Part shown: positions 4,112 through 57,462 of the stretch, piece by piece | Numbering within the stretch: position 1 is the first letter of the stretch | Layout: each line of letters begins with the position of its first letter | Source of the DNA: Kudoa neothunni | Taxonomy: Eukaryota; Animalia; Cnidaria | Assembly (NCBI GenBank): GCA_964304625.1 | Contig: OZ199838.1 | Coordinates: 11,619,608-11,683,607 of the forward strand | Length of the DNA: 64,000 nt | Reading direction: 5' to 3' | Made by a program: the position numbers and the translations under genes | The notes under the pieces: model-generated | Databases searched by the model: none | What the model was told of the DNA's origin: nothing | The model's input: only the letters and a program-made list of their open reading frames with translations

Positions 4112-5338
4112 TTAAACAATAAACTTTTTAGCAACAAAAAAAATGCTATTATACACAGAGTTGTTCATTGAGAGCGGATCAAGAAAATAGGGGGTATAAA
4201 CATTGGTTTCTTCTTCAACTATATTCAACCCAATAGTCTTCATTACTTGCTTTATTTCTTCGTAAGACAATTCTACGGAGAGACCATCATCATCAAGACT
4301 GTATGTATAGTGCAGAGGTCCTACATTGATCCAAGTTCCGCCTGGAGTCAGAAGAAGTGTGATTTTTTCAATATAATTAATAATATTGCGAGACGTGTCA
4401 ATAAAAAACGAAGTTACAACACAATCGAAACTGTATGGCACACTATAGTGCTTAGTATTATCAGATGGGTGAACCAAGATATATACTTGATCATATCCAA
4501 AAAACTTGCTGTAATAAGATCAACATGTTCAGCATTATTTCTGACCAAATTTATGCCTGCTCTATCGGGAAATTTATATGATTTTGCGATATCTTTGATG
4601 TGCTTTCTATTGGATAACACATCCATCCATGGGCAGATCATGTAGCTTTCCCCTTGGTTGATCGCATTAATTATTTTTTGTGTCGCAATTGACATGAGAA
4701 AGTTTTTTTCGACGCCAGTCACTGTGAATCCGGCGGCAGCTATTTCAAATAACAACCTGCCAACTCCACTCCCTGGGACAAGCACTTTGACGCGACGTCG
4801 GTATTTCGTTGAATCGCCAACTAAATTGTTGCCTATTAATTAACATGGTTAGAAATGTAATATGACTTAAAGGTTTTAAACTTTCTATATCATTATTTAT
4901 GTCTTCATGTATATCTTCATTTTTTGGAGGATACATATTTTCAAATGCTCTTAGAATGCGTCCTAAAACAGTGGACATCTCATTGACACCCTCCTCAGAC
5001 CATTCCCTGGTGATTTGTCGAAGCATAACCTTAACACTTCGAAATTTCGACTGATCCGTTGGTAATAAAAGGGAAGGTTCAAACGGAAGGTCAATGTTGA
5101 AATACTCATGTGATTTGTATCCAAATTGTCTTGTTACAAATGAATTTATTCGGAGAGCCTCCTGCATGTGCTCGTATTTTTCGTGAAGGCAATTTTTAAT
5201 ATAATTTTTTTGGCGTTCCGGTATAAGATAAGTAGCTTGGTGGTATCTCAACAGTCTTTCTTCCATCATTGGCTCATAATCATGCAACGCTTTCATACAT
5301 TTTAGCAACTCCATAGTTCTATCTAAATCTAATTTCAT
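4112..5338 (-). CDS. CARNMT1: Carnosine/protein-histidine N-methyltransferase-like (N2227 family), paralog A. Exons 5338-4882, 4832-4487, 4442-4112
   Basis: Family motifs REWSEEG, VLVPGSGVGRL (SAM motif I), FDCVVTSFFIDT, GGTWINVGPLHY and ELSYEEI. Introns 4833-4881 (49 nt, phase 1) and 4443-4486 (44 nt, phase 2) join three ORF-track fragments in frame. Confidence 0.88.
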
Positions 5339-5802: not shown

Positions 5803-7063
5803 TTAGAGTTTCATTGCAACAAAGAATATAGTTTCGTATTGGTTGTTGTCATTGTCGGGGGTTTGACATAGAAAATGCGCCTTAATTTTGGGTACTAATC
5901 GTTTAAGTTGAAATCCTCTATCAGCCATCAAGAGACATAGATTTCCAATGTCGATTGGCATTGATATTTCTCGTTCTTTCGTTGGATTAAATGAATCTCT
6001 GCACATAATTGGCCCCAAATTCACCCAATATCCGTAACGATGTAGAAGAAAATATATTTTATTAATGTGCTCCACAATGTTATAATTATAATCCATAAAA
6101 AAACAAGTGGCCACAACGTCGAAACAATCATTTTTTCTATTCAATGGAAAGAGTTTATATCAGTTTCACTGAAACAATCATACTTGCATTGCGAGAAAAG
6201 GCTGCCATGATACACTTCCAAAATTTCCTTCGGAGGTCTTAACAATTTCACGGCTGATTGGTCTGGAACATCGCAGTGTTCAAGATTACCACCTAAATCC
6301 ACTTGAGCTAACATGTCCTCCGCCCAAGGGTATATCTTGGCTTTAAATCCAATTTTTAATAGTTCAGTCAATTTCAGAGTAGCTACGAACATCTGTAAGT
6401 TTTCCTCTATGCCTGTGACATTGAATTCATGATAAACCAACTCATATAAAATTCTTCCAAGACGAAAATTAGGAACCAATATATTTATTTTTGATCTATA
6501 AGAACAAGGCAACGTATTCACTACAAACCCGCGATCTTTTCTCGCTAAATTAGACAAATTACTATGCATAATATCAAATTATGTCTATTTATACCAAAAA
6601 AGTAGTCTGCTGATGGACTATACAACTCACAAATGGTGCTAACAATAATATTTATACTGGAATCTCTTTCTTGTTGCCCTTCCTCGGACCATTCACGGTA
6701 AATATGTTTTAACACCGTTTTCACACCATCAAATGAATGTTCGTTGATTGATGGCAATTGATTTGGACAATAAGGGGTTTCTTTCGAAAACAGAAATTCT
6801 GCTCCAAGTGCAATCAGCTGAGTTATAACTCCATTGGACTTGATTGCAATTTTCAGTTGCGTGTATTGGGTGTTAAGAACTCTTATTGTCCTATCCTCAA
6901 GGACACCTCGAGCAGCTATGGATTGGTTTTCTAGCTGTGCCAATTTTGAAAGAGCCATGATTTCATGATCGTAGAAAGACTTAATATCTATGTGGCCAGC
7001 AATCATCCAAGTATTATCTAGGATGGTTTCGACGTTTGAAATATGAGACGGTTCCCCCGACAT
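5803..7063 (-). CDS. Divergent CARNMT1-like paralog B with degenerate SAM-binding loop. Exons 7063-6595, 6544-6184, 6136-5803
   Basis: Motifs REWSEEGQQER, ILVPNFRLGRI, FDVVATCFFMD and WVNLGP. Introns 6545-6594 (50 nt, phase 1) and 6137-6183 (47 nt, phase 2) sit at positions and phases equivalent to paralog A. The spliced frame is intact. Confidence 0.82.
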
Positions 7064-11784: not shown

Positions 11785-14374
11785 CCTCAAGATACCTGGC
11801 AAAAAGTTACACGAATGCCTGAAGAGGACCGCTACGGTCCTATGAAGTTTAATCATAGTATAATTATATTTGAAACTATTTAACTACAAAGGTAAATAAA
11901 GCAATCAAATAACTTGGTTTTAAGTCTAAAAAAGTAAATAATTTGCAAATGTAAACTTATTCAAAATCGATATCGTAAAAATGAATCAAAATAACGTTAG
12001 TTCATATAATTTCTATATTTAAAATAAATTTATCATTTTCAAAATTGTTATTTATGATTGGAATTAGCGGTTTAATCTAGTTGTTATTTTGATTTATTGT
12101 CAAAAAACCATTATTATAAACATATAATTAATAAATTTTTTTTCTTATGACTACAAACGATAATTTAACTTAAAGAATACAAATTAATTTGATATTTTAC
12201 AACATGAAACTGAAATACATGTTTAAACTATCCATACCATCTCATTATAATGACATTAATTCTAATCGTTCTGTCTAAAATCTAAATAGGTAAACTATGC
12301 AAATAAGATATATTTTGCAGATATAATCAAATTTAATAGAAAAATTTTAAGCGCGTATAAAAATATGATGGAATAAAGTAGATAAATAATACAATATGTT
12401 TTATTTTTGGTTGCACCCATCGAAATCGGTATTTTCAATTCGGTGATTCCCGCAGACAAATTAGTTGCAACTTGAACAAATTCTCCTGCTTTTTTTCTTG
12501 TTTACTGAGCAAATATAACATGTACCTCTTCCAGATGGAGGTTCCTTCCCTTTTATTGGGATGGTTTTGAAATTGATAGCATCGTTTCCCAGAAATTCTT
12601 CCGCTAACATTTTTAAAAACTCTCTTGGGGATTATTTTTATGAGCAATTTTGAATTGTGAGTTTCGATAAACATACAAAAGATATGCATTATAGGCGGTT
12701 ATATCGATGATGATGATGATGAAGAAAATCGCCATCGGCCAACTACGAGTGGCTCTTTGTGGAATAGCAGCGGACAATTTGGTCAAACGTATCCACCCCT
12801 TTTTAGTTTGGTTGTAAAAATTTATGATCTCTGTTCTTTTCGACTCAGGATCAATATCACAACCTTGATGTGTGGAACTTAAAAGTGCCGCGGATCTATT
12901 TTTTTGGGATTGTATTTTACCACGGTAAATTTATCCTGAAATAAAAATTTCACATCGTTTGGTGTTCCTCTGGATGATTGAAATTCAAGGATGAGAAATT
13001 TATTATTTTTATGGAGAGTCTCCACAATCGTTGTTTTCTGAGACATTAAGTATCTCGCAAGTGACGATGTGGAAAAAAAATTGTCCGTGGTAACGTTACG
13101 ACTTTTTTTTAAATAAGGTGTAACTAAATCCTTTACCACATTTTCACCTTGGTTGGTTTCGACAACACCGTTCACCTTACCAATATATACCTTTGCATTG
13201 CATATATATGTGTTTGTTGCATCACAAAATGGCTATATTTTTATCCCATACTTTCCAGGCTTAGAAGGAATGAACATTTTGAAGGGGAGCGACTTCTAAA
13301 TGTGACAATCTGTTCATCCATGGTCAATTGTAATGAAAGTTGTAACTTTGTTTACACGTCTTTATAAACTCAACAAATATATATTTGATGGGGAAAAGTT
13401 TATCTTATCTATCCCTGGTTCTTCTCTTGTCGAATCTAAGACAAGTTGCAAAATCTTCAAAGCGACTTCTTCTAATTTTTGCAATTAGTGATTGAAGACC
13501 ATATTTTTCAGTCAAAAATTCTTGGATGTTTTCATTGCGCCAATTAGTAAGATAGCTCCCAAGAAAATTTTCAACTCGACCATATTTATCTCTTTGACAT
13601 TGGGTTTTCTTGTTAAATAAATTTTTGGGTACAATATTGGATCTCTTCCAACATTTTATTAGTAAAATAATTATTAAAATCCCTTAAGGGGGTTTGGCCA
13701 TTCTGGAATGCTTTTTTGTAAATTCCACTTTTACATTATAAATATTTTCCGTTGTTGGCCTCCTTTCAACTTGGATTGGTGTTTTATGCCATTTTCTCCA
13801 TCTTTGGAGACAAGAAAAGAGACATGGGTCATATCTTCAATATTCGCATCCCTATCGTAAAAGCATCATCGTCGACTGGTTCATTAATTATTTTTTCCAA
13901 GTCCTCGGAACCACTTTCAATGTATAGTACATCTCAGCAATTTCATAATCGTGTAGAAAATATGTTCTTCGTTAGAATTCTTTTTTTAAGAAAATTTCTT
14001 GTTGAGCTCGCAAGCTTATAAAATAAATTCAATTCAAATTTTTGATTAAACACATAATAAGTCATAGACTGTTTTAGAATATTTTATATTGTTTATGGAA
14101 TATAACATTAAATTTAGAATGGCGTAATTATTGTAAAAAATATTAATTTTGTTACCAATTACACGTTGACCGAAATGATTCATCTCAGGTACTTGCGTAA
14201 CTTTTTTGTTGACTTATTTTTACAAAAATTCTCGGAACTTCCAGCTCTATTATTTTAAAATTTAATAAATCACACCTAAAGCGTAAAATAGGAATACATA
14301 AGAAAGTTTTAAAAATTGCAAGCAAAACGATATTAAACTTTTATCTCCCGTGGATCATTCCAGGTATTCGAGGG
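11785..14374 (-). mobile_element. Decayed piggyBac element with a frameshifted transposase pseudogene (~12435-14020)
   Basis: TTAA|cctcaagatacctgg versus ccaggtattcgaggg|ttag. Asymmetric subterminal inverted repeat (aaaaagttac at ~11801 and ~14197). DDD-motif remnants LTMDEQ, TTDNFF and YNQTKKGVDTFDQ lie on the minus strand across stops and frameshifts. Confidence 0.9.
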
Positions 14375-14607: not shown

Positions 14608-17225
14608 ATTGCGCTTAATAGACCTAACAATTGCCTTATTATGTATTGAATCTGTATTTAGTTTAAACTTTAAGGTAGTGGGTTAATAAAAATTTAATAG
14701 ATCCAAATAGATGCCTTTTATATGTATCTGAATAAAAGCAACAAATATAAACTGTAAAATTTTGAATTTATTGATTTATGTATAAGTGAATGCTCTGACC
14801 TTCATTGTACCGATGTTTTTAAAGAAAATTTATTATCAAGACAGTTTAGCTCAAGTACATAGCAGAGATCAGGTAAAAATCCTAACATAAAACTTGAAAT
14901 GTAACGTTATATAGCTTATATAATTACATGATGAATCTCAAATTTCGACGAAGGAAAAATTTAAGAACGTATCGTGGTTTCATTTTTAAGGATATAAGTT
15001 ATTCCGAACTAGATAATAATCTTGACAACCTAATCACAGCTTAGGTACATAAATATGTTACTTTAAAAGATAACAACGTTATGATTTTACGTGAAAATAG
15101 ACAGTGCATGATTGTGTAGGCGGAATAGGCATTATACAAACTATTGCCTTATTGCGCTATTTCATAGAATCAAGTAAAATACTTTCTAAATTAAATTAGT
15201 TTTTATATCGGATTTTTTAATAGAAATTATTGATAGCGAGACACCCATATATATTACTACACAGATTACGTCCTTACGTGATTTATACTTGGTTTAACGA
15301 AAATTAAGCAATAAATAAATTTAAGATTTATTTTCAAATTTATTCTAGAATGACTCCGCACCACCTGCAGGGAGTCTGTTTTAGATGATAACAGCTGAAA
15401 TTTTTGATGAATAATACAGTATATATTACGGCAAGACTTTCCTGAAAAATTTCTTTTATTGTACAAACTTCATCTCACAATCCCCAAAAAAATTTTTAAC
15501 GCCTTAAAATTTTATGAATCTAGCCAGCCATACTTGAACGTACAAATCTGCGGTGTGCTCTTTCAATACAAAAACCTGTTTTCCTCAGTCTATTATGTAT
15601 ATGTGAGGGGATAAATAAGTTTTAGTCTAATCATTGGTCTATTCGAAATTAATAAAAATTTAATATTTTTAAATCATTATTATTATATAATCATTGATCA
15701 TATAATAATAAAAGGATAGAAGCTATTTCGAGTTTTACGCAATAATTTAAGGATCCTCAGTTATTTACCAGACCATTATATCACGAGACTATTTTATTAA
15801 AATAATTCAACCAAATTATAGCCTAAAATCCAATTTGTTATGCTTCCTTAACTGAATTTTAATTTTTGACTGAAGATGGTGTATAGGGATTTTTAATGAA
15901 CACTCTTGAGAGAGAGTGAACAGAACTGCGGAAGCAACCGAGTATTTTTAAACATCTTACCAAGAAGATGCCTCATAATTACAATAACATTATTTTCTAC
16001 AAATATTTATTCGATCCCACGCAACATATTAAAAAAGTAATGCCCATAAACTTTTAATTTCTGCTGATTAATACATGTCCTACCGAATTAAATGAACTAT
16101 TTTTCAAAGAATATCAACTTTATTTTGATGTTTACAAACTAACTAATATCCCTATCTATGTGGAGGTTAGAATATTGATACATGAATAGTATAAACATGG
16201 GTTTTTATCAAAACAGAAACAAGTAAATCCTGGTTTTGAACATTTATATAAGAAAAAACAAATATTTGAACCAACATAACAATGTTTTTTTATTTATACA
16301 GTAAAATTTAAACAATAAAATATAGCACAAACCCCCTTGAGGAAACAATCAAACCCAATCAAACATCCATTTATACTTCATTATTATTATTATACTAAGA
16401 AGATTAATAATTTAATAATTATTATTTTAAATCTTTAAAAATAGGATAATAAGAATTTAATAGGCCTATTATAATTAACGATTCCCAATTCTAATACTCA
16501 AGAATAATTTAAGTTATGATGATCAATATATTGAAAAATAGAACGATAGATTTCATATGTGAAATACATAACACAAACAAATGGAGTATTTAAAATGTTA
16601 AACATTAGTTTATTTGTTGATAGCGAATTGAGAAAACATCGTATTTCCGCTGAGCGTCCCTTATCAGAATATTACTATCTATTTTATCTAACAATAAATA
16701 ATCAACGGACAAACTGCTGATCATTGGCTGGGTTGTATTATGTTTTTAATGACACCATTATCCATATTAAGAATTAATTTCTTACATCATTTATTATAGA
16801 ATATTTTCTTGGTGTCGTAGATGAGGATAACAGAATATTTAAAAGTGAACAGAAAATAATTTGATTTTAAATAAACAAAACAGCATATCTAACACTATAT
16901 TATTCTTTTGGTAAACCTAGTCAATAATATTTTACAAGTTAATAACTATTAGTATTAAACGAATTTGGTGTACATCGTGATCTATTCAAACCTCCCACCA
17001 CATTAATCATCTTAATATTAATTTATTGTATTATACATCACTGTATTTTCAGCCAAACATTAATTAGAAATACGATAAATCGCGAAATAATTTTCAAAAA
17101 TTACAAATGTTATATTATTCATTCCCTCCACTATTTAACCCTTTGATAATATTAAATGGTATTAGGATTAATGCATTTTAACGACCATCATTTGGTAGAT
17201 AGGGTTTTCAACAGGATAACATAAG

Positions 17226-19306
17226 ATGAGTGGTGGGACTTCAAGCAACAAATCGCTATACAAGGTATATCATTATTGTAGCTATAATAGGTGTCATTGT
17301 TGGGGTGAATTTTCTCAGGGTAGGCATTAATTTCGAGGTCAAATCTCACTTTTGTTGATAGACTAGTTTACAATTATTCAATCATGACTGTTTGTTAGAT
17401 ACCTTTATCAGTCTTTAATTGATAATTGGTTATTATTATTTCTGCACCTCCATTTTACATAATTCTAAAAAGGTTCAATCGGTATAGTTCCAATTTTAAT
17501 TCTATTTTTACCATTCAATTAAATAGAAATATTATTCTATTAATCATCCTAATTTCCACATTATTAATGTTAATTAAATTTATGAGATAATTTTCCCTCC
17601 GAAATGTTGATCTGATTTAATTTTGTTTCATTTTTAGGAAAAGATGGATCAGGTTACAAGCACGCTTTCCTATCCAACTGCGAATGCAGGTTCGACTTTA
17701 GGCGGGAGAATCGGCCGCACTGAACCCAACCTTAACGTTGCTCCCGAATCCACAAATTATTCGACCGTGAATGATTTATCGATCGTTAACAATCCAACTT
17801 GTTTTTCCAACTTTAACCCCCAGTTTTTCGATCTATATAATCAACCACTCAACCCTCAGTTTTCCAGTTTGAATGATCCTAATTTTTACAACGCTGCCAC
17901 GAATAACAATGTATTTTTTGGGTATACAGCCAATCCACAACCTACCAACTATCTAGGTGGTTTAAACTTGTTTTATTTTTTATTACATATAAAAAAATAG
18001 AAAACACCCTTAATGAAAGTTTTTCCGTTGATAGTACAAGGGAAAACGATTTCAATAACGTAAACTATGAGAATCGTGCTTATGGCAGTATCTATGGTCA
18101 ACCGAGCGCAAATCTAAGTAGTTTATATCCACAATATGCTCCCAGTCCATCAGCCAATCAAAAAATGGCTTCTACACCAAACAAATATAATCCTCAAGAT
18201 TTCAACAAAGTTGAAAAAATGGGGTCTGAGTTTTATCCAAAAAAAGCCAATATAAAAGTTGACGGATCAAGCCACATCAGCTACACCTCCCAAAAAGCAA
18301 ATTCTCTCGATCAACCACCAAATAGAAATGTTTCTAATGAATTTAAAAAACCAAGTTTTACTGGCACGTTTTTCTCACCAAACCAAGGTAAACAAAAATT
18401 TGAATAAAAACTGACCCAGCTTTATTAACTTTTATAGCCATAGGTTTCAATCCTGATGGATACAGTGCTAGTCTCAAATCTGGTCCTTACAATGAATACA
18501 ATCAATTTCCCTTAGCCCAAGGGCAAAGCAACCAAACAACATCTTACTCACAATTCAACCCTTTCTACACTAGAGCAAACGATTCACCTATGCATATGGC
18601 GCCGTTCATCGCACCAGGCCAAGATATCTACACAAAGTCTCAACAGAGTTTCTCCCCAATACGAGGCAACTTAGATGGCTGCACGTATCCTAGCCAAAAC
18701 ACGTCAGTATGCAGTTATGCTAACTGCGGAGATTGTTTAGGCTTCAATCCTCAGTATTATTCGAACTTGAATCAACCTTTTCATCCTCCCCAGCTTGATC
18801 TCAACAACGCAACCACCATCAAACCATTTCCAAACAATCCCAACAATCCTTTTATTGCTGAATCGCCAAAACTCAGATATTCCGCTGTCGGTCGTCAGTT
18901 ACTGTCAAAAGGTCTTTTTATTTTTTAGTCAAAGTAGCGCTGAACATTGCAATAGGTGGTGATATTGGATCAAAAATTATTTCGCCTAAGAAAAAACGAC
19001 TGAGAATGTCCTACAGTAGAAAACAATTGAGCTATCTGGAGGGCGAATACCAAAAAAAATCATTTCCTTCAACGAGAAAGAAGACTGGAAATATCCAAAC
19101 AGCTAAATCTTAGTGATCGTCAAATCAAAATATGGTTTCAAAATAGACGAATGAAGCAAAAACGAAATGATATGACGACCAAAAGTGGAAATGAATCTCC
19201 AAAAACTGAATCAAATTGTTCACCGCATTTCGAGCAAGATAGCCAAGAAAATGTTTTCCATAATAGCTCGCCCCCAAAACGACACGAATCCATTATTGAC
19301 AAATAA
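17226..19306 (+). CDS. ANTP/HOXL-class homeobox gene (posterior-Hox-like) with a 1-nt frameshift inside the homeobox. Proposed exons 17226-17264, 17638-~17956, 18001-18387, 18438-18890, ~18929-19306
   Basis: GT-AG introns join the ORF-track pieces in frame. Removing one A from the A8 run at 19052-19059 gives a 60-aa homeodomain [60 protein letters not shown] (18991-19171). The first exon and the true C-terminus are less certain. Confidence 0.85.
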
Positions 19307-19970
19307 TAACGATAACACTCTACAAAATAATTCGACCGGCTATTCACACAAGGAAGATTCCGGCAACAATTCAGATACTATTGATGTCACCTGCAGTAAT
19401 AGCAGCAGTAGTGTTAATTCCATTAGTCATCCTGTTGATCCACTCATTGGCGAGAAAAAATCATTCTAAAATACCACCAACTCTCAGCTAATCTAATGTG
19501 GTGGGATCAAACTATTTGTCTGACTCCATCATCTATGCCTCTATACGTGGTTCTCACATCCACTATAATACTTTACATAACTAATTCTAAGTATTATTTA
19601 TTATTATATATTAAAATTAGTGGTGTAGATTTCTTACTCCATTGTCGTTATCCATAAACTTTATTTATTACGATTTTGCAATAAATTAAACCTCTTTATT
19701 CTATTTATTAATAATAATCGTGTATATTATCCGTGATTTGATCTGCATATACATTGATATTATTAAAAAAGTCATTTGTAAATATATTACTCGAATCTCA
19801 TAGAATATCCATCTAAACAATTATTAACATTATGTGAACAATCTAATAAATATTCATCATGTTGTGTATTGAAGTGTTAAAAAATTATAAAACATCATCT
19901 TAATTAATATCTTGGGTTTTGAAAGTATGCATTTTTCCTTTTTATGTATACATATATATATATATATATA

Positions 19971-21696
19971 CATTTGTGTCTCAATATTGCGACTCGATAC
20001 TGCGTAATTGAACTTTATTAGCATTATGTGTTTGAGTTCATTAAATAAAATACAAATATCGTATTAAGTATGCTTGAATGAATAAATAATTGCACAAAAA
20101 AAATTCTGAATAAGCGGATATCAAATAACTAATGAAGATGTAATAAAAATAATTGATTACTATAATTTTTTTAAGTCTATATCGGGTGCTAATGATATTA
20201 CTGTAAGACCTTTCGGTTTATCAATTTATATTAACATCAATATTGTTCGATAATTTAAAATAGGTTATTTAAATCTTTTTAGAAGTTTTTCTAAACAAGA
20301 CGAAACCATAGATTCAAATATTATAAAATTTTTAAAAATAATTAAACCCATTAAATATAAAGATATTAAAATAATTTTTACAACTGGGTAGTTTCAATGC
20401 GAGAAAAAAACTATTATTTAGTTTTTTAATGATCGAAAAATCTTGTATTATTGCCAAAGATATTTGATTAAATGATTTTAGTGGAACCTAGAGTGAGTTT
20501 AATAATTGCAGAAGGCGTTACGGTTTGATAATCTCAAATTACACGGAGGAGAGCGCTGATTTTGAATGTATTTTTCAATGGATGGGAAATTTTAACGAGA
20601 TTTCGTCAAGATACAATCCTGAATACATGTTAAATTTGGATGAGATGGCTCATTTTTATTATCAACTGTACAGCGTACGTCCACTATTAAAAATTAGCAC
20701 AATGTAAGGGTGTAGAACATTCGAAAGCGTCCTACGGTTTTTTTCAAAGTTTCATCGGCCGCATAAAAATTGCATTTAAAGGTAATTAGAAAATTTTAAG
20801 AAAAATCGCCGTTTTAGAGTAAATAATTAGCTTTCAGTTGAACGTCATTCGTAAATGAATGTGTGATTATCTTCATCTATATTTTATCAGATCTTCAAAG
20901 ATATGAACCAGAGGTTCGTTAAACAAAACAGAAAGGCATTAATTTTATTATGAACTGTGCTCATATCGTCCTTAATCGATGGGTTATTTCAAAAATATCC
21001 AGCTGCTATTTATCAATAACACTGCTTGTGCGGTGAGACCAATTGATTTGATAATAATTCATCGCTTAAAAGTGAAGTAGAGGAAAATATTATGCATAAA
21101 TGTGTTATTCAGAGAGGAGGACCAATAAATATTTAAATATGCTGTAATCGATTACTTAAATACGTCAAAACTGATTCGGGTAATGGTTACGGTTCAAAAA
21201 TTAGTAATTGAGTTAATAAGTCGCCTATTATCAAACAAAATTAATTTATTTTTTTCTTCATTTTTATTAAAAAATTAAGAAGATAAAACTTTAAAGTAAT
21301 ATGATGATGAAGAAATAGTATAAAATAATTAATAGCACAATTTTAATATTCATATGTGTAGATAATGTGTAATTAAATGAAGATGATCAAAGTAAATGTA
21401 CTTTTTGAAACGAAGATCCATATCTCATACACAACGATGAAATCGTTACAACGTTTCATGTAACAAATCTCATAAATCTGCGAAAAAGTCATTGAGAACC
21501 CTAATAAATCATTTAATGTATATCAATTTAGGACGTTGTACGCGAAATTATTAGTAAATAAATAAAAAAATTATAAAGAAGATGCGTTATTTTGTAAGAA
21601 ATGTTAAATTAGATATTATTGTGCGTGCGCGGATTCCGTGATATCGCTCAATCTTTCCCCGGTCACAAAATATTACGCAAAAATGAGACCTGACTG
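19971..21696 (+). mobile_element. Decayed Tigger/pogo (Tc1/mariner superfamily) element
   Basis: YNPEYMLNLDEMAHFYY matches the pogo Y.P..I.N.DETGLF motif. Degenerate terminal inverted repeats: catttgtgtctcaatattgcg versus reverse complement cagtcaggtctcatttttgcg. (TA)n runs flank both ends. Confidence 0.75.
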
Positions 21697-49708: not shown

Positions 49709-51919
49709 CTCATTTTATGTACATACACCAAGTTATTTTGGGATATAAATACACTCCATATTTTTTTTTGATAAAACAAATAATAAAAATATTGTTAATT
49801 TGAGAAAATTTTAGATAATCCTATCGAATAAATTTGGGTAATTAGCCACAAACTGTTTTAATTGTCATTCGCGTACGCGCAATAAGTTTAAGATGTCTCT
49901 ATTTTGGCATATATTTTGAATATTTATTAAATTTACTCCCTTATTTTTTCGTCAAACTATGCTTAAGTTACGGATAAGTAATCATAACGCCTATATATCA
50001 AAAAACACATGCAAAATACTCCTAAATGACAAGAAAATAGAATGAATGTTAGTGTTAATGATTCAAACATATCGTACAAATATATTTTGAGTGGTGCTTA
50101 CAACAAGGAGAAGAACAGATATCACATCTTACTGTTGTTTTTCTGTCTTTTTTCTTATACAAAATCGACATCTGGAATAATTGATGTTGATTGATGAATC
50201 TCTGGATGTATTTAACGGGTTAACTGGTATCAAGTTTTGGTTTTTCCTTGAAACTAATGGACCAGCTAACTGTTCAACTATCATTTTTAGGAAATCCCTC
50301 CTCATAAGATTTGACGAATTAGATACGCTTTTGTAAATACAAAAAGTGATGATAAATGAAATGTCCAACATTAAAAAAACGACGAGTGACCAACGACGTG
50401 TGATTCTTTTCATACTCACTGATGCTAACAATCTAGCAATCGTATGAACCCCACCTTTTATAGCGTTAAAGTAAACTACAACATCAGGTTTATGTGGCGG
50501 TTCTGTCGCTGTGTGAACGTTGGCCGTCGAAGACCAAAGCATATAGACTGGTTTATTTTTGCGCGTTAGGTATCTTAATATCATTTTTTGCCGTGAAAAA
50601 TAAATTTGGAATAATTAATGGGGCTGTTTTTTTAGGTTGCAAGTAGGAAAAGATTTCCCTTTTATTTGAGGTTATCGTCCCAACTACCGTAATTCTTCCC
50701 TCGAGCAAATCTTCGGCCAGCTCAACCAAGGTAAATAAATTGTCACACACTAAATTCCTCCCCGAACCATAAAACGGTTCTAATAGCTGTAAAACAATAT
50801 TTTTACCACCGTTAACTGCTCTAACAACTTCATTATTTCTTTTCCCCCAATACACACTTACGTTAGATACATAGGTTGATTCAGGATCGACCAACAAAAA
50901 AATTTGATTCCGTATTTGGCTGGCTTCGACAGCATATACTGTTTAAATTTGCAGCGACCTCTGAAAACAACTTATTGCTCGTCGATGCAGGGATCTTCTC
51001 AAGTATGAAAGCTTCGAATGAGTAAATTATGCCAAATATTCCATAATTCGCGGATATGACAAAATTTATCGGTTCCCAAGTCGTCAAAATGGAGAGATCG
51101 CATTATTTGTCTAAATCGATTAAAAGTAAATAAATCGCGGTAAATCTTTCTCCCTTCATCTGGGCCAGATAGTTCCAAAATAGGTTCTTAATTATCCCTA
51201 TGTACACCTATCAACAAAAGACATCCGATAAAGCCATCCAATTCCATTTGGTCTAACTCTGTCCAGGCATTGCCGAAAATGTGTTCTCCGCATTGATTTG
51301 TGTATTTAAAAACAATTTCATACATTTTTTCGTTAAAAAATACTCGGAACAAATCAGTTGCATTATTTGCATGTTGAGATATCCAAGGAGCAATACTGAA
51401 GCGATTATACATCGTGTTTTCGGCTGCTGTTCTAATGGGTAAGGGAGGTTCAATCTCCCACAAAGTTCCATTTTTATCCAAAATTGAATTTATCTGGATA
51501 TTTGAATCAACATCGTAACCATTCGATGAAATATCATCCGTAAGAAAATAATCGTTGTCTGATGAATCAGTATCAGAGCAGCTCCCACTATAATCACTAA
51601 AACTCATTCGAAAGTAAATAATTCTGTGCAAGCTCGTAAATAAATTAAAAGTAATGTTTGTTGATTTGCTCAAAATTTATTCAATAAGATTCTCTCAAAA
51701 CTTGCACAAAGATATATTTTAACATTTTATATAGTTTTGTTGGAAGGAATAATAAAGATAATTTTTTCCCTAATTATAAAAAATAAAATTTAAATTTTAG
51801 TAGAAAAAAATATTTTTGGATTAGAAAGGTCCGTTAAAGAGATTTTGATATTTTATGTGGTACAAAATTGAAGTCTAGAATCGTTTGGGGTATAAATATA
51901 CACTATATTTTATAGAGTG
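49709..51919 (-). mobile_element. Decayed piggyBac element (transposase pseudogene ~50080-51610)
   Basis: Motifs FIGCLLLIGV, CIDEQ*, VCDNLFT and FNAIKGGVH (third catalytic D replaced by H), then RRWSLVVF and a Cys-rich tail (CRFC). Ends gagtg|TTAA, with the ggg.tataaata.ac motif near both ends. The left boundary is approximate. Confidence 0.88.
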
Positions 51920-54677: not shown

Positions 54678-57462
54678 ATGGATGCTTCATTTATCGATAT
54701 TCTAAAGTATGATAATGAATATTGTATTAAGTTATTCCGTCATTTTGGTCTGTTGAATTATGGACCTACATGCTCCGGTATTCATATGAAATTAACCCGT
54801 ATAGACTCGGTATCCTTTGTCTTTAAGTTACAAAGCTATAATTTTACAAGTACTCTCAAAATACGTTTATGAATTATATATTTTAGAATAAAAAAATATC
54901 TTTGTTTTAACATACCCTTTAACATGTTGCGTTAACGCAATATATAATCTACAGTGACCATAGGGATTAACGGATTAAATTTATTTATAATCGTATACAT
55001 ATTTTTTTCTGAAAAAAACACATATGAAAATAATAAAGTAATTGAGTATAAGGTATTAGTTATTGAAGTTTGTTAAAACAAATAGGGTGATACGACAAAC
55101 AAACACAATATTAGACTTGCAAATTTTGCATCTTGCTCTTTTTTCATCCGCACGTCGCTTAATAGTTTTATCGCCACATAAATTGTGTGTAAATTGGAAA
55201 GATACCGAGAACATGCGTTTTCTTGTTGTATCGAATTTGACAGTCAAAAGTTTTGACACGAGCGTTTTTCGAAACATAAGGGAATCCCCAGTATCAGGAT
55301 GGAGCAGTTTAAATATTTTTTGTAAATTGGAAACTGCCATGTTGATATAATTGCAAAATATATTCGAATACCACTTTTTTCCAGTTATTGAAATTCTGTA
55401 GATGACAATAGCTGAATCGAGTGAACCAACGCCACCCATATAACAATTATAACTGGCAACAACGTTTGGCATTGGAATCTATACGTCTCTTTTATTACCC
55501 TTAGAATACCTTCTGGCATTCATTATTGGTTCAGTTTGATCAGAATTTGCCCCTATAATAACTGGCCTGGTATCGTTCCATTTAACCAGCATCACTTTGT
55601 TGGCATTGTATGATTCAAAGAAACCACGATTTTCTTTGTTGAAAACGGTGTCGCATGTAAATGGACATTTCAGGGTCCTATTTTGTCGAACCGTTCCGGT
55701 GGCTTTTATGTTTAAAGAAGACAGGTAGTTTAAAAGTCCCACTGAGGCGAAGAAATTGTCGAAATAAAACTCGTAGAGTCTAGGATATTCGACCAATTTC
55801 ACAAAGTTTTTTACGACACTGCCACCTAGCCCTAATTTTTTATCTAAGTTTGTTCTTTTCCACAATAAATATCTGTGGAGAAGACATAGCCATTGTACGA
55901 ACAAAGACACCAACATTTAAAACCAAAATTGACTGGTTTACCTTCTATATACATTTTCGCGGAATGATGTCCAAAATAAGGTATCATTTGTTCGTCGATG
56001 GAAAGACATCTCCAAAAGTAACCGAATCGTTGAAAGGCTTGGTTCAAGATGTTTATATAATTCCTAACTTTTAACAAGCTATCATTTTTATATGCATCAT
56101 CAAAAAGTAAATTATTGTTGCATAAGTGAATATATTTTTTTATTTGTATGAATCTTTTGTTGGACGTACATTTCTTTACTGGTTTAACACCACAATCCAT
56201 ACCTTCTTCCCAATACATTCGTTGTCTTGGACGAGTGTTATAACCACTCAATACCAAAATTCCGATAAAATTCATCAATTCATCTTTTTCAATATCAAAA
56301 TCGTTATTTTGGCCGGCGTATGTGCCACTTTCTTTAATAATCAAATTTAAAACATTGGAGTCAAAGAACAATTAAAAAATCTCGCGTTCATCCATTGCAA
56401 CAATCGTGGGTTCAAATTCAACCAAGTAAAAGTCACAACCATCTAATAAAATACTTAAGATTATGTATAAAAACCTTTTCGTTTGTACCTTCCAGAGAAA
56501 TATCTGGATCCCTATTGGATACAGATCTGTTTGAGTAATCATTTAGCTCCCAACAGATTAATTCGTCTTTAAATATCGTCAAAATCTTTATCAATTACTT
56601 CCACTTGACATGATATTTCTTTGTTGAGTTGATTATCGATGAAAGTATTCGTGCCCTCGTCATTTGTACTTTCGTTATCAGTTACAACATCAACCCTTTC
56701 TGGAGGAATAATAACTATATCGATCAGATTTTCATCCAAATTTTCTTCGATCTCATTTATTACGTCGAGGTATAGATTATACCGCTTGTTCTCCATTTTA
56801 TGACAGAATTGCCGCCATTGATTATATGTTACGTGTGCGCAACAAAAATTGATCCTTATATTAAACTTTAAAGGAAACTTTTTAGATCACTTCTTTCATT
56901 TTTAGTACAATTATCATATCATGATCTAATTATTTTTAGATTATTGGCATCATTGAGTTTAACGCTGTGCAATAAATGTAAGAATATGAAAACCCTTAAG
57001 AGATGATCTTTTGTGCGTTTAATTATAGTCACATTTTAAATTGCATAAATTATTATTCTTCTATAAAATAAAAATTTATGAATTCTTCCAAGAATTAAAT
57101 CAGTTTTGTGTCATCGTACCCACTAACGTATGAGACAAATAACAACAAAGTTTCGTTGCGTTAACGCAACATATAGTCTATATGGGTTAATGAGAAGACA
57201 TCAGGTAATCGATGGATTCGTTAATTTTTGTCCAGAATGCAAAAGGCAAGAAACTGTCGGGAAAAACTCATTTTTTCAAAATAGTCATCTGAGACTTCAT
57301 ATAATATTAAAATTGATATTTTATTATTCCTATGATATTTCTTCACACAAGTTTATTGATAAAAATTTGGTTTCTGTTATTGTTCTCGACGTTATTACGC
57401 CATCGCTCTTTGATAAGAAAAGTTGTTCGTGGCGATCATGTTCCAATTTTGTTTCAATTTAA
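54678..57462 (+). pseudogene. Merlin/IS1016(ISXO2)-like transposase N-terminal fragment split by a piggyBac insertion (pieces 54678-54795 and 57191-57462)
   Basis: Removing the piggyBac and one TTAA gives the continuous frame ...FGLLNYGPTCSGIHMKL/MRRHQVIDGFVNFCPECKRQETVGKNSFFQNSHLRLHIILKLIFYY. This matches the Merlin Zn-ribbon pattern GLL...C...M.L...DG...C..C......SFF..S.L.L..IL.LI. No DDE core is seen. Confidence 0.7.
54796..57186 (-). mobile_element. Near-full-length piggyBac element (PGBD2/PGBD3-like transposase, frameshifted)
   Basis: TTAA|cccgtatagact and agtctatatggg|TTAA (11 of 12 match). Subterminal palindrome gttgcgttaacgcaa(c) at 54926 and 57155. Motifs SIDEQMIPYFG, YFDNFF, YNCYMGGVGSLD (D replaced by G), KKWY and C-terminal RCKIC. 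Confidence 0.95.

What the first reader, a model, noticed from the sequence alone, without database searches (positions are those of the whole stretch)
18991..19171. Hidden posterior-type Hox-like homeobox with a cnidarian signature, in what looks like a reduced parasite genome
Seen: a complete homeodomain absent from the ORF track, with R5, Y8, Q12, L16-E17, N23-H24-F25-L26, E29-R30-R31, [19 protein letters not shown]50 and M54. It sits among the genome's own tiny-intron genes, with the same intron style and no neighbouring homeobox. Known: [10 protein letters not shown] marks HOXL genes. From memory of the family, RM(S/T/A)Y(S/T)R and NHFL..ERR typify cnidarian Hox9-14/Anthox1/1a-type genes. 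Myxozoan genomes have been described as lacking Hox-like genes, and early myxozoan Hox reports were traced to host contamination. Inference: if the organism is a myxozoan, this is a genuine retained, unclustered Hox gene that annotation pipelines would miss. LSYLEGEY replacing LLELEKEF shows strong divergence.
Basis: partly seen in the sequence, partly recalled or inferred. Interest (0 to 1): 0.85.

Follow-up and report, generated by a model that had tools for sequence, protein, structure and literature searches.

The report
Single Hox-type homeobox gene, myxozoan parasite
A fish-parasitic cnidarian (a myxozoan), a group long reported to lack Hox genes, keeps one unclustered Hox-family gene of the jellyfish "Hox9-14C" type. 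The reference sequence breaks it with two one-base slips, but reads from the same sample hold an intact copy.

Summary
The homeodomain is real, but it is not one open frame in the reference. Residues 1-22 (18991-19056) and 23-60 (19058-19171) lie in different frames, split by one extra A in an A8 run. A second extra base in a C5 run (19271-19275) cuts off the C-terminal tail. Contigs of run X2, from the same sample, carry A7 and C4. With those two changes, four exons joined by GT..AG introns of 44, 50 and 38 nt give a 563-codon ORF with the homeodomain at residues 406-465.

An RPB2 tree pairs the window with Myxobolus squamalis (SH-aLRT 99), so the organism is a myxozoan. The nearest named homeodomains are Eleutheria Cnox-1, Hydra and Clytia Hox9-14C (65-67% identity). 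In a 73-row tree the gene and an intact relative from a 20%-GC contig (L014) fall inside the Hox9-14C clade (98/90). AU tests cannot exclude other placements.

It is the only Hox-like homeobox found in the 40-Mb genome, and the nearest other homeobox is 695 kb away. It lacks the tryptophan motif that medusozoan orthologues carry just before the homeodomain. No RNA evidence was obtained.

Prior work reports "no Hox" (2021) and "1 Hox-like" gene (Myxobolus honghuensis, 2022). The scan also flagged another cryptic homeobox elsewhere in this genome.

The parts
17644..17956 (+). Inferred exon 1 (ATG at 17644), coding for an N/S/P/Q-rich N-terminal region
   Evidence: Open frame MDQVTSTL.... A G|GT donor at 17956/17957 joins exon 2 in frame. 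Exon GC is 0.42 against 0.16 in the intron. Inferred; no RNA support.
17957..18000 (+). Inferred intron 1, 44 nt, GT..AG, phase 1
18001..18387 (+). Inferred exon 2
   Evidence: Lies within a 166-codon stop-free frame and joins exons 1 and 3 in frame.
18388..18437 (+). Inferred intron 2, 50 nt, GT..AG, phase 1
18438..18890 (+). Inferred exon 3
   Evidence: Open frame [11 protein letters not shown]...RYSAV. No Pfam match.
18891..18928 (+). Inferred intron 3, 38 nt, GT..AG, phase 1. An alternative donor at 18912 would give an implausible 17-nt intron.
18929..19469 (+). Exon 4: homeodomain plus a serine/asparagine-rich tail, with the stop codon at 19467-19469. This holds only when read with one base fewer in each of the two homopolymer runs.
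18991..19056 (+). Homeodomain residues 1-22 (N-terminal arm and helix 1), [22 protein letters not shown]
   Evidence: aligns to Cnox-1 residues 182-201, E 3e-6
19052..19059 (+). A8 run holding frame break 1. The reference and the X1 contig have A8; the X2 contig has A7.
19058..19171 (+). Homeodomain residues 23-60 (helices 2 and 3) in the next frame, [38 protein letters not shown]
   Evidence: PF00046 E 5.9e-13; PDB matches to Hox homeodomains; Cnox-1 E 8e-19
19271..19275 (+). C5 run holding frame break 2. The reference has C5; the X2 contig has C4 at depth 9.4. C4 extends the ORF from 19304 to 19469.

Best explanation
This is the one Hox-like (HOXL, ANTP-class) homeobox gene of a myxozoan genome. 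It is a divergent member of the cnidarian, medusozoan-type Hox9-14C family.

Shown: two collinear halves of a homeodomain lie in adjacent frames, and an in-frame DNA version exists in reads of the same sample. The host genome is myxozoan. The nearest relatives and the ML placement are Hox9-14C. The gene is single-copy and not next to any other homeobox.

Inferred: the gene has four exons separated by three phase-1 introns of 44, 50 and 38 nt, and encodes a 563-residue protein with the homeodomain at residues 406-465. The protein acts as a sequence-specific transcription factor. Helix 3 carries I47, Q50, N51 and M54, and the N-terminal arm carries R3 and R5, which is the set that reads TAAT-core sites in Antennapedia-type homeodomains. 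It probably controls stage- or cell-type-specific programmes of the parasite. It lacks the tryptophan motif that medusozoan orthologues carry just before the homeodomain, and no Pbx (PBC-domain) gene was detected, so it probably binds DNA without a Pbx partner.

The two +1 frame breaks in the reference are either a null allele that coexists with the intact allele in the sampled parasite population, or homopolymer consensus errors. I rate these two options as about equally likely.
For: Homeodomain: PF00046 on the C-part, E 5.9e-13. Collinear BLASTP of both parts to Eleutheria Cnox-1. The best solved-structure matches are Hox-C9, Abd-A, Ubx, Antp and Hox-A9.

Intact version: X2 contigs lack one base at 19052 and one at 19271. 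With both changes the four-exon model is 1692 nt and 563 codons with no internal stop, whereas the reference model stops at residue 446 inside the homeodomain.

Organism: the RPB2 tree pairs the window with Myxobolus squamalis, SH-aLRT 99.

Family:
- The highest full-homeodomain identity is 67% to a Hydra protein and 39/60 to Eleutheria Cnox-1.
- Cnox-1 of Eleutheria and Clytia Hox9-14C define the Hox9-14C clade in PMC2626245 and PMC9825252.
- The ML tree puts the gene and L014 inside that clade, 98/90 and, in the repeat without the four longest-branch own-genome outgroup homeodomains, 95/88.
- Each of the two still joins the clade when the other is removed, SH-aLRT 88 and 85.
- The R-M-(T/S)-Y-S-R signature is confined to that clade among the 436 retrieved proteins.

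Conservation: L014 is an intact homeodomain from a 19.6%-GC contig and shares FLQRERR, RMKQKR and an aromatic residue at position 15.

Single copy and unclustered.
Against: - The reference assembly and the X1 contig carry both frame breaks, so at least one real or apparent version is non-functional.
- There is no RNA evidence. No RNA run held the stretch, and the one RNA run that was laid gave no reads, so it may not contain the parasite. The splice model is inferred only.
- With 60 columns, AU tests do not reject grouping with the group I took for bilaterian posterior Hox (p 0.21) or with the Anthox1a-like group (p 0.32).
- The tree lacks named Anthox1, Hox9-14A/B, Gsx, Cdx, Xlox, Evx, Mox, Mnx and Gbx sequences, because only nearest neighbours could be retrieved.
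- The VPW(L/M)CR(E/D)ID motif of medusozoan Hox9-14C proteins is absent.
- There is no significant similarity outside the homeodomain to L014. The organism behind L014 is unknown.
Confidence: 0.72

Rival explanations
1. The gene is a decaying pseudogene. Under this reading the reference haplotype with two frameshifts is the true common state, the gene no longer functions in this species, and the intact X2 form is a minority allele on its way out.
For: The reference and the X1 contig (depth 6) agree on A8 and C5. The reference reading stops inside the homeodomain. The tryptophan motif is lost. No expression data are available.
Against: - Both halves of the homeodomain keep all core and DNA-contact residues with no other damage.
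- 66 codons downstream of the C-run stay open in the corrected frame in roughly 30%-GC DNA.
- The X2 contigs differ from the reference only at these two runs and show no substitution in 3 kb.
- An intact relative exists in another organism.
Confidence: 0.17
2. It is a non-Hox ANTP gene (for example Gsx, Mox, Evx, Mnx or a lineage-specific HOXL gene) that resembles Hox9-14C by convergence or by long-branch attraction.
For: The AU tests cannot reject alternative groupings. The C-part alone resolves only to a broad group whose named members are all cnidarian Hox sequences carrying the NHFL motif (SH-aLRT 81). Named non-Hox HOXL families are missing from the tree.
Against: An exhaustive HMMER search of 1.84 billion representatives, re-ranked locally against the full 60-residue homeodomain, gave Hox9-14C-type and other Hox-type sequences as the nearest single-domain relatives. 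Position-specific characters (M6, S9-R10-K11, H24-F25, K36-Q37) are shared with Hox9-14C only. In the solved-structure search Hox homeodomains score above Gsx2, Pdx1, Eve and Cdx.
Confidence: 0.08
3. It is host (fish) or other contaminant DNA misassembled into the parasite genome, as happened with the Hox reports for myxozoans in the 1990s.
For: Historical precedent only (my own knowledge). The runs that hold the stretch carry the label of one large-genome species that also has RAD-seq and metatranscriptome runs, which I take to be the host.
Against: The gene sits inside a 64-kb window of a 40-Mb, four-contig assembly, beside a myxozoan-type RPB2. It has the same base composition and intron size as its neighbours. 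It is at most 67% identical to any retrieved homeodomain, so it is far from vertebrate Hox.
Confidence: 0.02

Closest known systems
Medusozoan Hox9-14C family (Eleutheria dichotoma Cnox-1, Clytia hemisphaerica Hox9-14C, Hydra Cnox1/Hoxc2/Hoxc3)
   Same: Homeodomain 65-67% identical. Shared position-specific characters are R5-M6-(T/S)7-Y8-S9-R10-K11-Q12-L13, (N/S)23-H24-F25-L26, E29-R30-R31 and K36-Q37-L38-N39-L40, plus [14 protein letters not shown] with D42 in place of E42. ML placement is inside the clade. Like Eleutheria Hox genes, it is dispersed in the genome (PMC2626245).
   Different: Helix 1 is strongly diverged (LSYLEGEY against LLELEKEF). Positions 27-28 read QR instead of KK, and positions 56-58 read QKR instead of FKK. 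The VPW(L/M)CR(E/D)ID motif just before the homeodomain is missing. The N-terminal region is much longer and of low complexity. The host is a myxozoan.
Anthozoan Anthox1a-like genes (Nematostella protein named 'Hox-C4', Actinia 'Hox-A9-like'). Assigning these proteins to Anthox1a is my inference.
   Same: They share NHFL at positions 23-26, ERR at 29-31, YTRKQL-type helix 1 starts and a Q50/M54 helix 3. The AU test cannot exclude this grouping (p 0.32).
   Different: They have T6-A7 instead of M6-S7 and QVKIW instead of QIKIW. The ML tree places them outside the clade that holds the window gene.
The 'Hox-like' ANTP gene reported in Myxobolus honghuensis (Guo et al. 2022, PMC8855578) and the partial 'Ceh-11-like' homeobox of Tetracapsuloides bryosalmonae (Faber et al. 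2021, PMC7835236)
   Same: Both are myxozoan homeobox genes whose best matches are Antennapedia-type, so they may be orthologues. The count of one Hox-like gene per genome matches what I find here.
   Different: Their sequences could not be obtained here. Table S19 was cut in the held copy and no sequence is in the supplement. Neither paper assigns its gene to a Hox family, and Faber et al. state that they found no Hox genes.
Bilaterian posterior Hox (Hox9-13, Abd-B)
   Same: ANTP-class homeodomain with RERR at 28-31 and LNL(S/T)DRQ at 38-44. G18 in LEGE(Y/F) also occurs in one mammalian row of the group I took for posterior Hox (P0180, Camelus; Hox12-like by my reading).
   Different: The RKKR-x-PY(T/S)K N-terminal arm of that group is absent, and the gene has IKIW rather than VKIW. 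That group forms its own starred clade (98/89) away from the gene. The 'Hox9-14' name of the cnidarian family reflects a weakly supported relationship (PMC9825252).

Membership tests
Homeodomain (Pfam PF00046) | A 60-residue three-helix domain with W48, F49, N51, R53 and the hydrophobic core L16, F/Y20, L26, L/I34, L38, L40, I45 | tested here: met
   C-part: E 5.9e-13, profile positions 22-57. N-part: collinear match to Cnox-1. All core positions can be read. The domain is contiguous only in the A7 form seen in X2.
ANTP class, HOXL (Hox/ParaHox-like) subclass | Q50 and the helix-3 string (E/D)RQ(I/V)[10 protein letters not shown], with nearest relatives among Hox/ParaHox rather than NK-like genes | tested here: met
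   The string is present. In the solved-structure search Hox ranks first and NK, Msx, BarH and En rank lower. The top single-domain hits of the exhaustive search, re-ranked against the full homeodomain, are Hox-type.
Cnidarian Hox9-14C (Cnox-1 Ed / CheHox9-14C clade) | The homeodomain falls inside the clade in a phylogeny | tested here: inconclusive
   The ML tree places it inside with 98/90 and 95/88 support, and the result is robust to removing either long branch. AU tests do not reject two alternative placements (p 0.21 and 0.32), and several HOXL families are missing from the data set.
Cnidarian Hox9-14C (Cnox-1 Ed / CheHox9-14C clade) | N-terminal arm and helix 1 signature K-R-x-R-M-(T/S)-Y-S-(R/K)-x-Q-L | tested here: met
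   The window has [12 protein letters not shown]. Among the 436 retrieved proteins the pattern occurs only in the 16 Hox9-14C-type sequences.
Cnidarian Hox9-14C (Cnox-1 Ed / CheHox9-14C clade) | Conserved tryptophan motif VPW(L/M)(C/Y)R(E/D)(I/F/V)D directly before the homeodomain. I observed this here in 9 of 10 family members; it is not a published definition. | tested here: not met
   The window has ...[13 protein letters not shown] before the homeodomain, and L014 also lacks the motif.
Cnidarian Hox9-14C (Cnox-1 Ed / CheHox9-14C clade) | The host organism belongs to Cnidaria (Medusozoa plus Endocnidozoa) | tested here: met
   The RPB2 exon is sister to Myxobolus squamalis, SH-aLRT 99. That Myxozoa is sister to Medusozoa is taken from the literature (PMC9825252).
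Bilaterian posterior Hox (Hox9-13, Abd-B) | Groups with the posterior Hox clade and has an (R/K)KKR-x-PY(T/S)K N-terminal arm | tested here: not met
   The arm is [10 protein letters not shown]. The group I took for posterior Hox forms its own starred clade without the gene. Forced grouping costs 12.6 lnL units but is not rejected (p 0.21).
Hox cluster member | Physical linkage to other Hox/HOXL genes | tested here: not met
   There is no other homeobox in the 64-kb window. The nearest is 695 kb away and is not HOXL, and no second HOXL gene was found in the genome.
Expressed, functional gene | A transcript with the predicted splicing and an open frame | not testable with these tools
   No RNA run held the stretch, and the RNA run that was laid (X10) gave zero reads.

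The most novel reading that the evidence does not exclude
Myxozoans as a group have kept exactly one gene of the cnidarian Hox complement, a Hox9-14C orthologue. It would be conserved between distant myxozoan lineages (the window gene and L014), stripped of its Pbx-interaction motif in a genome without Pbx, and in this species segregating with a double-frameshift null allele. This would overturn the 'no Hox in Myxozoa' statement and give a minimal, one-gene Hox system in an animal without a body axis.
Probability: 0.4. Interest if true: 0.72.

Novelty: new member of a known kind. Interest (0 to 1): 0.58.

Why it matters
Myxozoans are the most reduced animals known, and they are repeatedly cited as having lost Hox genes. 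The earliest myxozoan 'Hox' reports were host contamination. A parasite-encoded Hox-family gene that can be assigned to a specific cnidarian family (Hox9-14C) changes the question. It is no longer 'were all Hox genes lost?' but 'what does a single Hox gene do in an animal made of a few cell types and with no body axis?'.

It also gives a concrete target for tBLASTn searches, expression work and orthology work across Myxozoa and Polypodium. Finally, the gene escapes ORF-based annotation for three reasons: it has tiny introns, its flanks are of low complexity, and the reference carries two homopolymer frame breaks. Absence calls in such genomes may therefore be unreliable.

Tried and rejected
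- Dicyemid, orthonectid, Oikopleura or nematode origin. I considered these at first because of the tiny introns and low GC. The RPB2 tree rejected them.
- A 17-nt intron (18912-18928). Rejected in favour of the 38-nt alternative, which has the same phase and fits the 44-52 nt style of the other introns counted.
- N-part alone against Pfam and the PDB. There was no Pfam hit, and the PDB E-value was only 0.56, because the piece is too short.
- Searching for the window's own protein or close orthologues in the 5.8-billion-protein collection. No identical or close entry was listed. The top hits of the representatives search were inflated by multi-homeodomain proteins and had to be re-ranked locally.
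- Similarity between the N-terminal exons and the 301-residue ORF upstream of the L014 homeodomain. None was significant.
- RNA evidence. Run X10 gave zero reads on the stretch, which is no test, because the parasite may not be in that run.
- Identifying the organisms behind L013, L014 and L015 from their run accessions in the paper library. No paper was found.
- Reading Table S19 of Guo et al. and the Faber et al. supplement for sequences. They are cut or not held. Chang et al. 2015 is not held.
- Naming more tree rows with the listing of cluster members. Most rows carry no name.
- A window-wide scan for other homopolymer frame breaks. It found only one candidate (12899, T7), which lies in a decayed piggyBac-like transposase and is uninformative.
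- AU tests for the 'Rhopilema-like' and 'bilaterian central' groupings did not finish in time.
Full report
**1. What the sequence shows**

The rest of the homeodomain, [38 protein letters not shown], is read from 19058 in the next frame. The switch lies in an A8 run at 19052-19059, where seven A's would keep the frame. This explains why it is 'absent from the ORF track' and why the quoted span is 181 bases rather than 180.

Pfam PF00046 matches the C-part only, at profile positions 22-57 with E 5.9e-13. The N-part is too short to score alone. It does align to residues 182-201 of Eleutheria Cnox-1 (E 3e-6), and the C-part aligns to residues 204-258 (E 8e-19). The two pieces are therefore collinear halves of one homeodomain.

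**2. The frame breaks**

Contigs of three runs of one sample (X1-X3) and raw reads of one RNA run (X10) were laid on 17000-20000.

- X1's 5.5-kb contig (depth 6) equals the reference.
- X2's contigs have one base fewer at 19052 (A7, depth 4.5) and at 19271 (C4 instead of C5, depth 9.4). They show no substitution anywhere.
- X1's contig ends at 19298. Its next contig starts at 19272 with six unaligned letters, as if X1 also holds the shorter C-run. This is my reading of table 8.

Removing both bases gives one open frame from 18929 to a stop at 19467-19469. The 66 codons after the C-run are open in the corrected frame, which is unlikely by chance in roughly 30%-GC DNA. Two random errors would not both restore a long ORF, so the X2 form is a real coding sequence.

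Whether the A8/C5 form is a real null allele or a homopolymer consensus error could not be decided. If it is a real allele, it is in the same host sample, where myxozoan stages may be diploid or mixed. If it is an error, it is shared by the assembly and X1.

Another first-reader note in this genome reports three same-direction +1 breaks at short homopolymers in another gene (s1-690228, unchecked). My scan of this window found no further break in a conserved gene.

**3. Gene model (inferred, no RNA)**

Three further open segments lie upstream. Canonical G|GT...TAG| sites join them to the homeobox exon. The exons are 17644-17956, 18001-18387, 18438-18890 and 18929-19469. The introns are 44, 50 and 38 nt, all phase 1, with GC 0.16-0.32 against 0.36-0.43 in the exons.

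With A7 and C4 the model is 1692 nt and 563 codons without an internal stop, and the homeodomain lies at residues 406-465. The reference reading stops at residue 446. Neighbouring genes have similar short introns: RPB2 52 nt, and introns that look about 45-50 nt by eye in GCLC.

The joined model and the frame-joined homeodomain were built only inside local scripts, to check continuity and for alignment and trees. All database searches used the pieces by reference.

**4. Organism**

The 638-residue RPB2 exon (767-2680) is 72-74% identical to many animal RPB2 sequences. In an ML tree it is sister to Myxobolus squamalis MXB_480 (SH-aLRT 99) on a shared long branch outside Bilateria. The path length of 0.49 means it is not a close relative of Myxobolus.

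The genome has 40.3 Mb in four contigs. The runs that hold the stretch carry the label of one large-genome species that also has RAD-seq and metatranscriptome runs, which I take to be the host. Other agents' unchecked notes call the genome Kudoa, probably K. neothunni of tuna. I tested only 'myxozoan'.

**5. Which homeobox family**

- *Solved structures.* The C-part scores best with Hox-C9, Abd-A, Ubx, Antp, Hox-A9 and Ftz. Gsx2, Pdx1, Eve and Cdx follow, and NK, Msx, BarH and En score lower.
- *Exhaustive search.* An HMMER search of 1.84 billion representatives, re-ranked against the full 60 residues, puts a group reading KRKRMTYSRKQLLELEKEFH-(S/N)HFLKKERR...KQLNL(S/T)[18 protein letters not shown] on top.
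- *Named members.* The named member of that group is Eleutheria dichotoma Cnox-1. A further search added Clytia Hox9-14C, Hydractinia, Hydra, Aurelia and Rhopilema proteins. PMC2626245 and PMC9825252 place Eleutheria Cnox1 and Clytia Hox9-14C in the medusozoan Hox9-14C clade.
- *Tree.* In a 73-row homeodomain tree the window gene pairs with L014 (95/96), and both sit inside the Hox9-14C clade (98/90). The repeat without the four longest-branch own-genome outgroup homeodomains gave 95/88. Each joins the clade alone when the other is removed, with SH-aLRT 88 and 85. The C-part columns alone place the gene in a wider group that holds Hox9-14C, the Anthox1a-like rows and the Rhopilema-like rows; every named member of it is cnidarian (SH-aLRT 81).
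- *Signature.* The R-M-(T/S)-Y-S-(R/K) arm occurs only in this clade among the 436 proteins retrieved.
- *Limits.* With 60 columns, AU tests do not reject the gene pair grouped with the group I took for bilaterian posterior Hox (p 0.21) or with the Anthox1a-like genes (p 0.32). Named Anthox1, Hox9-14A/B and non-Hox HOXL families were not available.

'Posterior-type' is thus a family label and not a demonstrated relationship.

**6. Differences from the family**

Helix 1 is diverged (S14, Y15, G18, Y20). Medusozoan Hox9-14C proteins carry VPW(L/M)CR(E/D)ID directly before the homeodomain, and the window gene and L014 do not. No PBC-domain (Pbx) match and no extra TALE homeobox were found in the genome. 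This is a weak negative, because the search works exon by exon.

**7. Relatives and copy number**

L014 is a 3.7-kb contig with 19.6% GC from an unidentified run. It encodes an intact homeodomain, [61 protein letters not shown] 301-residue N/Y-rich ORF and a short gap precede it. It shares about 37 of 60 positions with the window gene (counted by eye on the rows), including FLQRERR, RMKQKR and an aromatic residue at position 15. It is probably the orthologue in another AT-rich myxozoan, but this is inferred.

In the window's own genome, 12 homeoboxes were found. None of the others is Hox-like. The best match to the Cnox-1 homeodomain is this locus (68% identity against 52% or less elsewhere). 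The nearest other homeobox is 695 kb away.

**8. Function (inferred)**

The DNA-contact residues R3, R5, I47, Q50, N51, R53 and M54 and the hydrophobic core are intact. The intact form should therefore fold and bind TAAT-core sites like other Antennapedia-type homeodomains. Given the lost tryptophan motif, it probably does so without Pbx. A role in stage- or cell-type-specific gene control is the default expectation. Nothing here tests it.

**9. Literature and novelty**

Faber et al. 2021 reported the first myxozoan homeobox transcripts. They stated that, 'as in previous myxozoan studies', no Hox genes were found, and they listed a partial Ceh-11-like homeobox (PMC7835236). Guo et al. [quoted passage not shown] A 2023 transcription-factor catalogue of M. 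bejeranoi counts 57 homeodomains without Hox classification (PMC10454682). That Chang et al. 2015 reported loss of Hox genes, and that the 1990s Hox reports were host contamination, rests on my own knowledge, because the paper is not held.

The presence of one Hox-like gene in a myxozoan is therefore not new. The assignment to Hox9-14C, the gene structure, the frame-break polymorphism or error, and the loss of the tryptophan motif were not found in the searched papers.

**10. Verdict**

The gene is a new member of a known kind. Interest is moderate to fairly high for evo-devo and parasite genomics.

Noticed in passing
L014:1651-3114 (Logan contig of run SRR31175926, 3705 nt, GC 0.196): An intact homeodomain is the closest relative of the window gene. 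A 301-residue N/Y-rich ORF and a short gap precede it. It is probably the orthologue in another very AT-rich (myxozoan?) organism. The organism is not identified.
   Followed up: partly
Another first-reader note reports three such +1 breaks in a different gene of this genome. The cause could be a systematic assembly artefact or a genome-wide allele pattern.
   Followed up: partly
whole genome G000: No PBC-domain (Pbx) match and no TALE-type homeobox beyond the ordinary homeodomains were detected. This goes with the missing tryptophan motif in the Hox-type gene. It is a weak negative from an exon-wise six-frame search.
   Followed up: partly
G000:C1:6091142-6091282 (L009) and G000:C1:5675339-5675476 (L011): Two paired-like homeoboxes match the Pfam model only up to position 46/47 and then run into unrelated sequence. 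They are probably split by an intron at the classic 46/47 position.
   Followed up: no
window 51188-51673, 55056-56371 and 12879-13175 (all on the minus strand): Fragments of piggyBac-type transposase (PF13843, E 8e-38 for 55844-56368). The one near 12899 is broken at a T7 run. These are decayed mobile elements in a compact parasite genome.
   Followed up: partly
window 4745-5338 and 6545-7063 (minus strand): Two nearby ORFs each give a weak match to the start of carnosine N-methyltransferase (PF07942, E 4.5e-5 and 5.1e-7). They may be a tandem duplicate or two exon sets.
   Followed up: no
L015:1099-1425 (Logan contig of run SRR23287130, GC 0.285): Another divergent Hox-type homeodomain, [60 protein letters not shown], from an unidentified AT-rich organism. 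It did not group with the window gene.
   Followed up: partly
RPB2 is only 72-74% identical to other animals but is not extremely long-branched.
   Followed up: yes
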